Source: Magallana gigas (taxonomy: Eukaryota). From it: DNA of 64,000 nucleotides. A program made the translations under genes and the position numbers. Position 1 is the stretch's first letter, and every line of letters begins with the position of its first letter. Positions 3,543-11,309 of the stretch are shown here, in pieces. The stretch lies in assembly GCF_963853765.1 (NCBI RefSeq), contig NC_088859.1, positions 46,810,001 to 46,874,000 on the forward strand, in the 5' to 3' direction. Under the pieces are notes generated by a model that worked only from the letters and a program-made list of their open reading frames with translations, had not been told where the DNA came from and did no database searches.

Positions 3543-6500
3543 TCATGATTTCTTAAAAATCAAGGTTTTGTTATTTGCTGGCATATCAACCTACAACAAA
3601 CAATTCATATTTATAATACACGTAAAGACAACACAATGTTTATAATTATTGAATTATACAAGAGAAAATGTGTATTGTACAAGAAGGAAAAAGATATTTA
3701 ATAAGCACTTACTGTTTTAATTAGGGACATTTTATTTTGTTCTGCAAGATGTTCTACATCGTCAACATCCCTTACTCCCCATCTACTGTCTCTATAATGG
3801 AAACACAGACCAAGCTGTTTCATAATATACTTGCTTACAACATATTAAGCATTTTCATAATATACCAGCACCTTGTGCCAGAGTCATCACTTTTGTAAAT
3901 GACATGTATATGTACATACATGCTTTGCCTTATAAATGTTTTGTGCTATAATGGCAGAAAAAAAAATAGAAAGTGAAAGAGGTATAGCGCACTTAATATA
4001 CGTTTTGGCCTCAAATGTAGCCTTTTGCAAACATCAGACATTTTAAATATTATACAATATTTATTGAAATATATTCAAAAAAACGCAAATAACACAATCA
4101 CCATGCTCAAAGAGTCTTGATTATCTTATACGACATCATTAAAATATTCAGGTTTTGTTAGGGATATATAGGAAAGTAGTTAGTATACGAAAAAAAAATG
4201 GATATTTGACTATTTTAATCACTCTAAACCAAGGACATCGGATCAAATTTATGTTCTACAGGTATTGTAATACACGTTTAGTCGTTTACATTGAATTAGT
4301 TTTGGTTTAATGTGGTATTCGTATAGACAAATATTTCATTTAGTGTCTTTTCTAATACGTACAATCTTGTATATAGCCATATATATTGAAAATGCATCTG
4401 CTGAAAATGTTAGATGCGTGGCCTAGTGGTAACGCGGAGGTCTTTTTGATTTTGTGGTCGCTGGATCGAATCCACTAAATAGTTTTTTTTTTTTCACTTA
4501 AATTGAAACATGAACAGAATAGAGAGGTTAAGTTTCATGCATCTAATCATCTGGGTTTTTTTTTAATTATCTTGTTTAATTCAGTCTGAGTATGAGCACA
4601 CCCAATATAAACAGATCTCTTCATTAACACTATACATGTACTCTATTTACGCTTGGATCCTTTGCATTTTGCTTGAACTTATCACGGTTCAGAATATCAA
4701 CTACTGTTATACTCAGATATCCCGAATTTATGACAAATCAGTTGTTATAGACACCATTATAAAATCAGTACACTTGAATCAGTTTCAGTCCAGGTTTCGA
4801 ATCATATTTTGACAGCTAGGTACCTGAAGCTATTTTTAGTAACAGGTACTTTCCATCCAAAAACAGGTGTAGGCGAAATAATGGGAAAAGGCGCTATACC
4901 TCTTTGGTATTTTGCAAAGTTATGCACAATTTCCTTCATAAAAGTAAGAGCTGATTATGACACGTACAATATCATGCTGTCTATTAATTATACTAAAAAT
5001 AAATTGTACAAGTTATGATTGTTTTTGTTGTTTATCACTGATTTCAATATGGTCTCCTTTGCACATTTCCTCTCTTGCTCTCTTGAATAAGAATATACAT
5101 GTATTTTCATGTACATAATCTTACATGCTGTCATTGAGATGTTTATTGACAAAAAGTATATATTTTTCATCTAGTTATATACTAAAGTAATCATCATTAG
5201 CAAAGGGTGATGATCAACCCCTTTCTGCTTCCCTTTTCACAAGTTGACGATCTTACATAATTTTACATAAAAGAATGCAGAGATGATCAACTCTGGCTAT
5301 ACTCTGTCCCGAGTTTTTGCTTCCACCACTTTTTGCTTGATATTTCAATAACAGTAAATACCTTTGTGCTCAAACTACGTTCATCCACTAATATAAAAAA
5401 ATGTCCAGATTATCTGTTTTGAAACGCCCCCTCTACCGCTTCAGGTTTCAATACACATCCCGAAATTGAAAGTCTACGGAGATTTTTGCATTGCAATAGC
5501 CATTAATAAGCCCGGATGATAACGTTAAAAAATTGCGCGATGTATTCCGAGTGTATTCCGAATGGAGAAAAGATGTAAACATTCCCCATTATAAATCTCC
5601 GTAAGGAATCTGTTTTTGTTCCTGTGAATTTTTATGAGTGGAAAGGGATAATTGATTAATGAAGATATCTTGGATATATTCCCTTTTAACGATTTCAAGT
5701 GTATTTCTTTCACAGGTATGTGTATTTTTATTAAAAATCATCAAAAAGCGATGGAAGCAATAACTTGGGACAGACTATAGTGAAGATGATAGTTTATTAT
5801 TTTATCAAATCATGCAAGAAAAAGCAGAATTCTTGCTCAGATTTCTTACAGGTGAGATAGATCTTAAAAAAGCAGCAAATGATTGTTTTACACTTAAGAT
5901 GATCATAACAAACCTTTGCCTCAAGGACGCATCAAATGAAACATTGCTCTCTGGAGTTAGTGTGCCATGAACAGCAAATGGCTGAGGGAAAAAAAAACAA
6001 TATTGGAATGTATAATCATTCGCTATTTTTATTTTTATTTCGAAATTAGAGGCATCAATATGAATAACATACCCCATACAAAAATAGCAATCCACCACTC
6101 TTGAGTAGAGTACCACAGCCACGAAACAACCCCTGTGAATGAAAACTTTGTTATTTCATTATTTTTTAAGTGTGACAGTGAGACCAGCTTGAATACCGGC
6201 ACCAGATAGCTCAGTTGGCAGGGCACCTGACTAGAGATTCAGGGGCCTGGGTTCAAATCTCTGTCAGGTCTGTCATTATTTCTCCCATCCCGTTACATTT
6301 GGTGTAGTGGTAACCCCTGAAACTGACAGGTTGACTCCTGCCAGTGGAATAGCCTGAGGTGATCTTAGAAGGCAAAAAAGGGGGAGGAATGTTACGGTCA
6401 GACTAGTTTGAATACTTGCACCAGATAACTCAATTGGTAGAATTTGGCTAGTGATTCAATGGACCCGGATTCAAATCCTTGTCTTGTCCATTATTTCTCC

Positions 6501-8448: not shown

Positions 8449-11309
8449 ATGTATGCATTACAGAGAGGACCAAGCAAACTCGTCGCAAGCACCCGCAGAG
8501 GTAACTTTCTTTTTGCTATTTCTCATCATTATAAGAATGTACGCACCCGCCAGATGTGTCATTTTGAAGGGGAATTTTTGAAGACCGTTTTTACATGCTT
8601 TGTTTTATTCATAGGGCCAACGAAATCTCTCAATAACCTTGAAAAGAAGGACCACGAGAAAGATTCTAGTGAGGAAAATACAATGAGGTGTGTATTTTCT
8701 TATTTTCGTATTATTTTACATCTCTACCGACATATGTCTCGAAATCAAAGTTTAGATTTCAATGACATCTTGCGTAAATTATACCTGGTAAACAAACCAC
8801 CACGTGTATTTACAGTATGATGTAAACAAGTCTGAACGAGAGTTGGGGGGGGGGGGTAAATATACTGATAGTGATACTTATTTATAGTATATTTTCATGA
8901 TTTGGATAAAGAATTCTTTTTTTTCTACGCTTGAAATAAACATAATATCTTTCACCAATAATGACTCATTATTGAGCATGTTGTAAAACTTTTAAAATTT
9001 TAAAATGTGTTATGAATGTGTATTGGGATATTTTTTTTGGGTGGGGGGGGGGGGGGGTGAATTTTAAGTGAAACAAACAGAAACAACTCTTTAGTAATAT
9101 TCTTTTAAAATATTTAGATATGTATACTATAATAAAACAGAGTCACATGATGCATATAAATTCATAATTCCCCAATTAACAAAACTTAATGTGTGATTTT
9201 TTTTCTAATTATACCTGTAATAAAACAATTACATTATCTTTTCTTAATCTTTTGCATTACAGCTCTCCAAAGCCTACTTTTAACTACAACCAGCACCATG
9301 TAAATGGAAAGCGTGGATATCCCAGATCTAACAGCAGTGGCTCTGCTGAGGCATTTACCCCTCAACACGAAGAGATTGTTAGATTTCTGTATGAAGGTGA
9401 GTTTACAAAGAATCAACTTTTTAAATGACCAGGATTCGTATCAATTTTTGGCAATCAATATCTCGTGTCAATTTTTGGCAAATGGACATGAATCACAAAT
9501 TATATACATAAATTTTGAAATATGTAAATTTCCCAGTGTCTCTGTCTGTGATAGAACTGCAAATCAAATTTCATTTATATGTTTGGATAATTTCATACTT
9601 GGCATATAGCCTGAAATGGACATGTTGAACAGAATCATGTGGAAATGCTTTGTGCTGAGTGGTATCAGTCTGCATTGCTTGAAAATATTGAGAAGTGTTA
9701 AATGATGTTCGGGCACAGGCAGAGTTTTCATGATGTAAATAATGTGAAAATGAAAATTTTAATTGTATGTACACTGAATTTCACTGATTGAAAAATAATG
9801 TAAATATACAATGTAATTAATAAGGAATCATTCTTTGACTTTTATAAGGAGATCAGTTACACCAGGGGCAGGATCAAATCCAAGGGTTAATGATAGATTT
9901 GATCATGTACAGTAAATGATCACTATCATAATTTATCTCTGCATAAAAGTAAAAAAATTATTCTTTATTCCATAAATAAATATGAAGCGGATTCTTTTTC
10001 ATGGATAATGTCCTCCAATTAAGATATAATTTCTGTGATACCTGGGTAATTAAAGGTAACAAAAGATTTACCGTAATGCACTTCCACCAATTGGGCCTTA
10101 ACTTATTTTAATGACTTGCATCAAGCTGTAATAAGATACATGTGTCCAGACTCAGTTTTCATGTCTTTTTTTTCAGCATGGACAAAAGTAAACAATGAAA
10201 TGGATTCGTGTGCTCGTAGTCAGAGAGAAGGTATAAAAAAAAATTTCATTTTTTGTTTAGAACTGTCACTTACTTAGATTTGTGTACCCCTCTTAAAATG
10301 TTTCTGTTCTATTACTCAGGAGGACCTATAGTTTATAAAGACAAGAATCCAAACAACCCAACGCTAGCCAGTAAGTAGTGTCACGTCTTTAACAATCAAT
10401 ATCAAAGTGTAATCTCCCTTTTTAACTTGTTGTTAATTCTTGTGTTTCAACTGGTGTAACAAATTCATCAAATTGAATGATTATCAGTATTAAAATATTA
10501 AACTTAATCTCTTTAAAAATAATTCAATTTCATCTATGTCAAAACTAGAACTGGGAAAGAAGCATCTTCACAATGTCAAGACCTATTGTTGTTATTATTG
10601 TTGGGTCCCTCAAACGTAGCCTTGACAAAAGTTTACCATGGAATCAACATTGTTCGTGGGGGACCAATGGTCATGGCTTTGTGGGTAACCCTTGTCTACG
10701 AATTTACATCCCCATGAACCTATACACATTAATTGTTTAATATTTATTAAAATGATTCCAATTACATTACCAACGAAACAACATCCCCACGAAGTAGGAA
10801 AATATTGGCAACCCACGAACATTGACCCCACAAATGAAAATGATTTCAGAGTACATCATAAAGATAGGCTAATCCAAGTACATGTATCACACAATAAGTT
10901 GAGATTAAAAATCGAAAATGAAATCAGTGTCTCATTATTTTTTATTATTTTCTGTGTGGTTTGTATTATTTGGTTAATATCAACTGATGCACAATTATAG
11001 GTAATGTAAATGTTTTAAAATATTGAGAATAGAATCAATAAGCAATGAAAAATGACAGCTCTGCATGTTTCATTAGCTGTTGATACTAAACCATGTCATG
11101 AATACAGAGGAGACGTAAACAACATTATAAGTCTTGACATTATGAAGATGGGAAAAAAGTACTTTCATGAACAGTTTATAGTTGAAATCATGCACCTGTA
11201 TCTGACATGACTATTATCATTTCTATTTGTTGTTTCAGATTTTAAACCTTTTGACTTGGAGTCTTACTGGGGAGACCGTCAACTAAATAGTTTGAATATA
11301 CAAAAGTAA
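8449..11309 (+). CDS. MCRIP2: MAPK-regulated corepressor-interacting protein (MCRIP1/2, FAM195 family)
   Basis: Exons 8449-8500, 8615-8687, 9263-9396, 10177-10230, 10320-10370 and 11239-11309 join in frame. MYALQRGPSKLVASTRRG resembles the MCRIP2 N-terminus; also VNGKR, FTPQHEEIVRFLYEAW and NFKPFDLESYW. Probably the single pro-ortholog of MCRIP1/2. Confidence 0.92.
10563..11150. mobile_element. Nested MITE-like insertions in MCRIP intron 5
   Basis: Outer ~30-bp inverted repeats: CATCTTCACAATGTCAAGACCT (10563) and AGTCTTGACATTATGAAGATG (ends 11150). Inner element ~10635-10853 has GTTCGTGG/CCCACGAA inverted motifs and TAC...GTA ends. Confidence 0.55.

What the first reader, a model, noticed from the sequence alone, without database searches (positions are those of the whole stretch)
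3543..11309. METTL26 - tRNA-Gly(CCC) - MCRIP trio beside HGS appears to be an ancient microsynteny shared with human
Seen: METTL26 (-), an intact minus-strand tRNA-Gly(CCC) just 5' of its main coding exon, a divergent MCRIP (+), and HGS immediately adjacent. Recalled human annotation (verify): a tRNA-Gly-CCC gene of apparently identical sequence lies between METTL26/C16orf13 and MCRIP2/FAM195A at 16p13.3 with the same orientations, and HGS lies near MCRIP1 at 17q25.3. Inference: one pre-vertebrate HGS-METTL26-tRNA-MCRIP block was split between paralogons. A single tRNA gene holding its position since the protostome-deuterostome split would be rare and suggests a cis constraint (Pol III boundary or shared promoter chromatin).
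Basis: partly seen in the sequence, partly recalled or inferred. Interest (0 to 1): 0.75.

Follow-up and report, generated by a model that had tools for sequence, protein, structure and literature searches.

The report
Old gene trio hosting a tRNA
In the Pacific oyster a working glycine tRNA gene sits in the shared promoter gap of two back-to-back genes (METTL26, MCRIP) next to HGS: the gene trio dates to early bilaterians, the tRNA has kept its slot for roughly 500 million years in bivalves, and an identical tRNA fills the same slot in a rodent, though common descent of the two tRNAs is unproven.

Summary
Observation confirmed. The window is Magallana gigas. It holds the HGS 3' half (+, stop 3181), METTL26 (-, 205 aa, 3543-7549), an intact tRNA-Gly(CCC) (-, 8127-8197) and MCRIP (+, 144 aa, 8449-11309).

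The tRNA lies 251 nt from the MCRIP start codon and 577 nt from the METTL26 start codon. It is one of four identical copies in 564 Mb.

The protein-coding block is ancient. Amphioxus and two oysters have MCRIP/METTL26/HGS contiguous in the same orientations. Mussel, sea slug and nemertean keep METTL26/HGS, and a rodent keeps MCRIP2/METTL26.

An identical tRNA, in the same slot and orientation, is present in Crassostrea virginica, in a clam-like (heterodont) metagenome contig beside MCRIP, and in the rodent Thomomys bottae. So it is about 480-500 My old in bivalves.

The slot is intact but has no tRNA in amphioxus. There is also no tRNA beside METTL26 in skate, swordfish, mussel, scallop, sea slug, nemertean or sponge. 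In those species MCRIP is not adjacent, so the tRNA could have stayed with MCRIP.

Descent of the oyster and mammal tRNAs from one ancestral gene is undecided: about 0.42 for shared descent against 0.5 for independent capture. Human loci were not examined directly.

The parts
1..3181 (+). 3' half of HGS (Hrs): UIM at 2-70, Hrs_helical exons at 873-1046 and 1306-1481, Pro/Gln-rich tail ending LISFD, stop at 3179-3181. Convergent (tail to tail) with METTL26.
   Evidence: Pfam UIM, and Hrs_helical 2e-22 and 7.9e-10. Sequence read. tblastn finds the same exons downstream of METTL26 in C. virginica, Mytilus, Tubulanus and amphioxus.
3543..7549 (-). METTL26 (DUF938 methyltransferase-like 26) coding region, 205 aa. 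Exons 7549-7356, 7088-6920, 6132-6073, 5981-5914, 3791-3713, 3590-3543.
   Evidence: Pfam PF06080 on three exons. All introns are GT-AG with an open frame. 100% identical to a named M. gigas protein. Single copy in the genome.
7826..7879 (-). Alternative METTL26 5' exon (annotated isoform X1, N-terminus MHIALFNKTVHHLT...). It lies downstream of the tRNA in the METTL26 sense. Coordinates are approximate.
   Evidence: tblastn of the N-terminus of P0171.
8119..8197 (-). tRNA-Gly(CCC) gene (8127-8197) plus its Pol III terminator (T5 at 8119-8123).
   Evidence: ARAGORN. Rfam tRNA 61.6 bits, E=6e-11, full length. T-run seen. One of 4 identical copies in the genome. Identical gene in the same slot in C. 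virginica, L024 and Thomomys.
8301..8324 (-). Alternative METTL26 5' exon (annotated isoform X2, MHDHFMRM). It lies upstream of the tRNA, so the tRNA is intronic in that isoform. The ATG is not conserved in C. virginica, so this is probably a 5'-UTR exon in effect.
   Evidence: tblastn of the P0172 N-terminus, 8/8 identical. Alignment A1.
8449..11309 (+). MCRIP (FAM195; MAPK-regulated corepressor-interacting protein) coding region, 144 aa. Exons 8449-8500, 8615-8687, 9263-9396, 10177-10230, 10320-10370, 11239-11309. Divergent from METTL26.
   Evidence: Pfam PF14799. Unique in-frame GT-AG model collinear with Saccostrea P0307. N-terminal exon MYALQRGPSKLVASTRRG is conserved in amphioxus and rodent MCRIP2. 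Single copy in the genome.

Best explanation
What it is. HGS, METTL26 and MCRIP form a real microsynteny block of bilaterian age. METTL26 and MCRIP are head to head and share a gap of under 1 kb (a bidirectional promoter region). HGS is tail to tail with METTL26.

The tRNA. The tRNA-Gly(CCC) is an ordinary, functional-looking Pol III gene with internal A and B boxes and a T-run terminator. It sits in that gap and is transcribed in the METTL26 direction. It has been there since at least the common ancestor of oysters and heterodont clams, roughly 480-500 My. That date comes from general knowledge of bivalve divergence, not from a tool.

Why it persists (inferred, not shown). The most likely reason is passive. 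A housekeeping bidirectional promoter that is always open is a good home for a Pol III gene. The gap is too small for a rearrangement or deletion to remove the tRNA without damaging two promoters.

The mammalian tRNA. The identical tRNA in the same slot and orientation in a rodent is, by a small margin, more likely a second, independent capture into the same conserved open promoter than the same gene inherited from the bilaterian ancestor.
For: - Gene models and orthology. Both genes are single copy.
- Age of the trio: MCRIP/METTL26/HGS are contiguous with the same orientations in M. gigas (window), C. virginica and Branchiostoma floridae.
- METTL26/HGS stay convergent in Mytilus edulis, Elysia crispata and Tubulanus polymorphus.
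- MCRIP2/METTL26 are divergent in Thomomys.
- tRNA age in bivalves: the same 71-mer, same orientation and near-constant spacing to the MCRIP ATG (251, 234 and 248 nt) in M. gigas, C. virginica and contig L024.
- L024's MCRIP groups with venerid clams at 100/99 support, and its sequence is held by 'mollusc metagenome' runs.
- Functional look; T-runs in all four species.
- For independent capture in mammals: the intact amphioxus slot has no tRNA. Skate and swordfish have none near METTL26.
- Published surveys find fast turnover of tRNA loci. The deepest same-anticodon synteny they examined (human-Xenopus) was absent from stickleback, lamprey and lancelet (PMC2888827).
- Most oyster tRNA genes sit in tandem arrays, so a solitary promoter-embedded copy is a special case.
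Against: - Independent capture needs the same anticodon, the same orientation and the same inter-gene gap twice. My rough estimate (inference, not a tool result) is about 1e-4 per locus, and about 0.05-0.1 after allowing for all oyster tRNA neighbourhoods that could have been noticed.
- The locus is demonstrably very stable in bivalves. One loss in amphioxus over more than 500 My is therefore not surprising under common descent.
- The negative results in skate, swordfish, mussel, scallop, sea slug and nemertean come only from the METTL26 side. In all of them MCRIP is not adjacent, so a tRNA that stayed with MCRIP (its nearer neighbour in bivalves) would have been missed.
- The passive-persistence mechanism is inference. 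No expression, TFIIIC/Pol III occupancy or chromatin data were examined.
Confidence: 0.5

Rival explanations
1. Single origin. The tRNA-Gly(CCC) was already in the MCRIP-METTL26 gap in the last common bilaterian ancestor, and the oyster and mammalian genes are orthologous by position. It was lost in amphioxus. In lineages where the MCRIP-METTL26 pair broke up, it was either lost or carried away with MCRIP.
For: - Identical 71-mer, same slot and same orientation relative to both genes in oysters and a rodent.
- Only 4 copies in the oyster genome.
- The host gene pair itself is of bilaterian age.
- The tRNA has demonstrably stayed put along two bivalve lineages of about 500 My each.
- In 3 of the 4 species where the MCRIP-METTL26 adjacency is intact, the tRNA is present.
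- If the human chr16 copy is the one named tRNA-Gly-CCC-2-2 (unverified), it falls in the class of human tDNAs bound by many transcription factors and syntenically conserved (PMC7567086).
Against: - Amphioxus has the intact slot without a tRNA.
- No tRNA within 10 kb of METTL26 in skate or swordfish.
- Spacing differs: in the rodent the tRNA is 164 nt from METTL26 and 3.1 kb from MCRIP2, while in bivalves it hugs MCRIP.
- tRNA loci generally turn over fast (PMC2888827).
- Sequence identity carries no weight, because this isodecoder is identical across animals.
Confidence: 0.42
2. Active cis role. The tDNA, through TFIIIC and Pol III, is kept by selection because it works as a boundary or insulator, or as a nucleosome-excluding element between the two divergent Pol II promoters. 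On this view it is not a passive passenger. This is compatible with either history above.
For: - The tRNA lies within 251 nt of the MCRIP ATG and between alternative METTL26 5' exons, so the Pol III and Pol II machineries must share the region.
- The spacing to MCRIP is nearly constant over about 500 My.
- Human tDNAs can act as insulators, and tDNAs rich in bound transcription factors are syntenically conserved (PMC7567086).
Against: - Amphioxus keeps the same divergent pair with a 238-nt gap and no tDNA, so the pair does not need it.
- Flanks of the tRNA are not conserved between oyster and L024 beyond the tRNA and the MCRIP coding exon.
- No functional data.
Confidence: 0.25
3. The tRNA is a pseudogene, a tRNA-derived SINE or an assembly artefact, and its position means nothing.
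For: tRNA-derived SINE-like copies do occur nearby in METTL26 introns (6200-6271).
Against: - Full-length 61.6-bit tRNA with a canonical cloverleaf, B box and terminator.
- Identical to the other three genomic copies.
- Found at the same place in three independent assemblies of other species.
Confidence: 0.02

Closest known systems
Deeply conserved metazoan microsynteny blocks and conserved bidirectional (head-to-head) gene pairs. General knowledge of work by Irimia and colleagues (2012) and Simakov and colleagues (2013), recalled and not read here.
   Same: Orthologous single-copy genes keep order and orientation across phyla (oyster, amphioxus, partly mammal, nemertean, gastropod). A tight head-to-head pair shares a promoter gap of under 1 kb.
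   Different: The block also carries a Pol III gene inside the shared gap. Whether this trio is already listed in published block catalogues could not be checked: literature searches for the gene names found nothing relevant.
'Ancient conserved tDNA loci' reported by Bermudez-Santana et al. 2010 (PMC2888827)
   Same: A tRNA gene with the same anticodon is retained between the same flanking protein-coding genes over long times, against a background of rapid tRNA-locus turnover.
   Different: Their deepest examined cases are human-Xenopus and were absent in stickleback, lamprey and lancelet. Here the bivalve conservation spans the pteriomorph-heterodont split (about 480-500 My). The oyster-mammal match, if homologous, would be far deeper.
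Human tDNA insulators (ALOXE3 and PER1 clusters) and 'Group 1' tDNAs rich in bound transcription factors and DNase-hypersensitive (PMC7567086)
   Same: A tRNA gene embedded in open, promoter-like chromatin next to Pol II genes, and syntenically conserved.
   Different: No occupancy, insulator or chromatin data exist for this locus in this work. Membership is untested.

Membership tests
Functional nuclear tRNA gene (Pol III type 2) | Full cloverleaf and a high covariance-model score with an unambiguous anticodon | tested here: met
   Rfam RF00005 61.6 bits (gathering score 29), model positions 1-71. ARAGORN calls Gly(CCC).
Functional nuclear tRNA gene (Pol III type 2) | Internal A and B boxes and a downstream run of at least four T as terminator | tested here: met
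   Exact B box GGTTCGATTCC, A-box-like TGGTGTAGTGG, and T5 three nt downstream. T-runs are also present in C. virginica, L024 and Thomomys.
Functional nuclear tRNA gene (Pol III type 2) | Transcription and Pol III occupancy | not tested
   No oyster RNA or ChIP data were laid.
Bilaterian-age microsynteny block (HGS-METTL26-MCRIP) | The genes are orthologues (single copy, same family, conserved exon signatures) | tested here: met
   PF06080, PF14799 and PF12210 hits. One locus each in the oyster genome. MCRIP N-terminal exon MY..(G/R)PSK is shared by oyster, clam-like L024, amphioxus and rodent.
Bilaterian-age microsynteny block (HGS-METTL26-MCRIP) | Same order and orientation in both protostomes and deuterostomes | tested here: met
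   Oysters and amphioxus have all three genes. Mytilus, Elysia and Tubulanus keep METTL26/HGS. Thomomys keeps MCRIP2/METTL26. Not found in the sponge Sycon.
Positionally orthologous tRNA gene shared by molluscs and vertebrates | Same anticodon, slot and orientation in both clades | tested here: met
   M. gigas, C. virginica and Thomomys bottae.
Positionally orthologous tRNA gene shared by molluscs and vertebrates | Presence in intermediate lineages (continuity of descent) | tested here: inconclusive
   Present in a heterodont-like bivalve. Absent from the intact amphioxus slot. Absent beside METTL26 in skate, swordfish, mussel, scallop, sea slug, nemertean and sponge, but MCRIP is not adjacent there and the MCRIP side could not be fetched.
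tDNA insulator or boundary element | TFIIIC binding and enhancer- or repressor-blocking activity | not testable with these tools
   Needs ChIP and reporter assays.

The most novel reading that the evidence does not exclude
One and the same tRNA-Gly(CCC) gene has occupied the MCRIP-METTL26 bidirectional promoter since the last common ancestor of bilaterians (more than 550 My). It survives in bivalves and mammals because the tDNA is part of the promoter's architecture. That would make it by far the oldest positionally conserved tRNA gene known, and a natural test case for coupling between Pol III and Pol II.
Probability: 0.4. Interest if true: 0.85.

Novelty: new variant of a known kind. Interest (0 to 1): 0.6.

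Why it matters
Individual tRNA gene loci are thought to turn over almost as fast as neutral sequence (PMC2888827). This locus shows a tRNA gene staying in one slot of about 250 nt for roughly half a billion years in bivalves, inside a bidirectional promoter that is itself of bilaterian age.

If the mammalian copy proves to be the same gene, it would be the deepest positional orthology known for a tRNA. It would also give a tractable system, in mouse or oyster cells, for asking whether a tDNA contributes to a shared Pol II promoter.

If the two copies arose independently, the locus is a clear example of the same open promoter being colonised twice by the same isoacceptor.

Either way, a simple tRNA scan around MCRIP orthologues in existing chromosome-level assemblies would settle the question.

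Tried and rejected
- The first MCRIP search with the exon-2 ORF gave only 3 Logan fragments, because of the length filter.
- Look-up of amphioxus isoform X2 (P0031) failed, because only the longest isoform is indexed. It was repeated with P0163.
- DNA for Owenia fusiformis (annelid) was withheld.
- The genome search cannot reach the eukaryote genomes behind fetched loci, so the MCRIP side in skate, swordfish, mussel and scallop could not be examined.
- Exact-71-mer scans of genome contigs and viral contigs gave 0 hits.
- Of the 60 metagenome contigs carrying the tRNA, 49 have at least 320 nt of 5' flank and 38 have at least 800 nt of 3' flank. Only L024 carries MCRIP and none carries METTL26.
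- Literature searches for the human gene order and for the tRNA's human coordinates gave nothing decisive. The only result was that 'chr16.trna34-GlyCCC' exists.
- Apparent conserved non-coding DNA between oyster and L024 turned out to be MCRIP coding exon 1. tRNA flanks are otherwise not conserved.
- My initial 104-aa MCRIP model starting at 8683 was replaced by the 144-aa model.
- Read laying was not used. No N stretches were met. The stretch sent to the look-up of sequencing runs deliberately left out the tRNA, which is identical to a mammalian sequence.

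
Full report
**1. What is in the window**

ARAGORN and Rfam both call an intact tRNA-Gly(CCC) at 8127-8197 on the minus strand (61.6 bits against a gathering score of 29). It has an exact B box, an A-box-like element, and a T5 run three bases past its 3' end.

Pfam scans and manual splicing give clean GT-AG models for the three protein-coding genes.

- **METTL26 (DUF938, minus strand).** Six coding exons between 7549 and 3543 give 205 aa. The protein is 100% identical to residues 20-224 of 'methyltransferase-like 26 isoform X2 [Magallana gigas]', so the window is the Pacific oyster.
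- **MCRIP (FAM195, plus strand).** I first modelled 104 aa starting at 8683. Bivalve homologues then showed two further 5' coding exons. The full gene is 144 aa from 8449 to 11309, collinear with Saccostrea MCRIP.
- **HGS (plus strand).** Its 3' half (UIM, Hrs_helical, C-terminal LISFD) ends at 3181, 361 nt from the METTL26 stop.

Two details are new. The tRNA is 251 nt from the MCRIP start codon and 577 nt from the main METTL26 start codon. Annotated METTL26 isoforms also use alternative 5' exons on either side of the tRNA (about 7879-7826 and 8324-8301), so in one isoform the tRNA is intronic. That upstream exon's ATG is not conserved in C. virginica, so it is probably untranslated in effect.

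Both protein genes are single copy in the 564-Mb genome. The tRNA has only four identical copies: this one and a cluster of three on another chromosome. Most other high-scoring oyster tRNA genes lie in tandem arrays.

**2. Other species**

I used METTL26 relatives found with the exon-1 peptide and with a mussel protein, named through cluster look-ups. For each I fetched 10 kb either side of METTL26 and scanned it with ARAGORN, Infernal and tblastn.

Loci fetched around METTL26 (locus coordinates, METTL26 on the plus strand):

| Species | Locus | Arrangement | tRNA-Gly(CCC) |
|---|---|---|---|
| Crassostrea virginica | L011 | MCRIP(-, ATG 9377), METTL26(+, 10001), HGS(-, 12472-20015), then an Arf-like gene | 9612-9682 (+) |
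| Branchiostoma floridae | L009 | MCRIP(-, ATG 9762), 238-nt gap, METTL26(+, 10001), HGS(-, 16734 onward) | none |
| Thomomys bottae (rodent) | L006 | WDR90, MCRIP2(-, ATG 6659), METTL26(+, 10001), WFIKKN1, RAB40C | 9766-9836 (+), 71/71 identical to the oyster gene |
| Mytilus edulis | L005 | METTL26/HGS convergent pair; no MCRIP within 10 kb upstream | none |
| Elysia crispata | L008 | METTL26/HGS convergent pair; no MCRIP within 10 kb upstream | none |
| Tubulanus polymorphus | L013 | METTL26/HGS convergent pair; no MCRIP within 10 kb upstream | none |
| Pecten maximus | L010 | neither neighbour | none |
| Amblyraja radiata (skate) | L012 | vertebrate downstream neighbour RAB40C (WFIKKN1 not listed); no MCRIP2 within 10 kb | none |
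| Xiphias gladius (swordfish) | L014 | vertebrate downstream neighbours WFIKKN1 and RAB40C; no MCRIP2 within 10 kb | none |
| Sycon ciliatum (sponge) | L007 | neither neighbour | none |

An exact-match scan of metagenome contigs for the 71-mer gave 60 contigs. Only one, L024 (a 3.6-kb marine metagenome contig), carries MCRIP.

- It holds a complete five-exon MCRIP 5' part on the minus strand (ATG at 3070) and the tRNA on the plus strand at 3319-3389. That is 248 nt away, divergent, and followed by a T-run.
- Its MCRIP shares the MGRGMYALPSRPSKIVANARIG N-terminus with venerid clams. It groups with Ruditapes and Mercenaria (100/99 support, 65-68% identity) and away from oysters and mussels.
- The only public runs holding the stretch are labelled 'mollusc metagenome'.
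- The contig ends 209 nt after the tRNA, so METTL26 could not be checked there.

**3. What this establishes**

- **The protein-coding trio is a bilaterian-age block.** The full arrangement is shared by oysters and amphioxus, and its two halves survive separately in several spiralians and in a mammal. The human side of the paralogon argument (HGS near MCRIP1) was not tested.
- **The tRNA is old in bivalves.** The same isoacceptor, the same orientation and nearly the same spacing to the MCRIP ATG (251, 234, 248 nt) occur in Ostreidae and in a heterodont-like clam. That places it in their common ancestor, about 480-500 My ago by general knowledge of bivalve divergence. This already exceeds the deepest tRNA-locus conservation discussed in the survey I could read. 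That survey found rapid turnover, and its human-Xenopus cases were not conserved in fish, lamprey or lancelet (PMC2888827).
- **A mammal has the identical tRNA in the same slot and orientation.**

**4. What remains open**

Is the mammalian tRNA the same gene by descent?

Against descent:
- The intact amphioxus slot lacks it.
- Skate and swordfish lack it near METTL26.
- tRNA loci usually move.
- In the rodent the tRNA sits beside METTL26 (164 nt) and is 3.1 kb from MCRIP2.

For descent:
- The coincidence is improbable. My rough estimate (inference) is about 1e-4 for this slot, and about 0.05-0.1 after allowing for every oyster tRNA neighbourhood that might have been noticed.
- The locus is demonstrably stable.
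- Every negative except amphioxus comes from a species where MCRIP is no longer next to METTL26. In those, the tRNA could have stayed with MCRIP, which I could not look at because the look-ups were exhausted.

Sequence identity says nothing, because this isodecoder is invariant across animals. I put independent capture at about 0.5, common descent at about 0.42, and the remainder on other readings.

**5. Mechanism**

Shown: the tRNA has all the sequence hallmarks of an active Pol III gene. It lies among the 5' exons of two divergent Pol II genes.

Inferred: it persists because the gap is small, constitutively open, and cannot be rearranged without harming two promoters.

An active boundary or promoter-architecture role, as proposed for some human tDNAs (PMC7567086), is possible. 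It is not required, because amphioxus keeps the pair without a tDNA.

**6. Limits and compliance**

- Human loci were not examined. One paper lists a human 'chr16.trna34-GlyCCC' (PMC3800616).
- No assembly gaps were met.
- The tRNA letters were left out of the sequencing-run query.

Noticed in passing
window 6200-6271 (+), with similar copies near 6440-6520 and 6650-6720; also about 4420-4480: tRNA-derived, SINE-like elements lie inside METTL26 introns. The first scores 30.1 bits as a tRNA but has an abnormal anticodon loop. Three similar units lie in series in intron 2.
   Followed up: partly
L011 20453-22099 (C. virginica) and L013 19748-21740 (Tubulanus): In C. virginica an Arf-family small GTPase gene lies head to head with HGS. 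In the nemertean a thymidine kinase gene takes that position. From memory, ARL16 and TK1 both lie near HGS at human 17q25.3, so the conserved block may extend further. Not checked.
   Followed up: no
G000 C6:42.92-42.96 Mb, C3:27.43-27.47 Mb, C3:7.36-7.42 Mb: Large tandem arrays of identical high-scoring tRNA genes with periods of about 0.5-2.4 kb. They contrast with the solitary copy studied here.
   Followed up: no
window 12659-19814: Earlier first-stage notes of this scan flag a RAG1-like two-gene transposon just downstream of MCRIP. It is not part of this finding and I did not examine it.
   Followed up: no
window 8846-8858 and 9041-9058: Two G-runs of 13 and 18 bases lie in MCRIP intron 2.
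   Followed up: no
P0309 and P0166 (Mytilus californianus): The MCRIP and METTL26 proteins of M. californianus are both recorded on a contig of the same length (117,871,512 bp). They are probably still on one chromosome although no longer adjacent. The distance is unknown.
   Followed up: no
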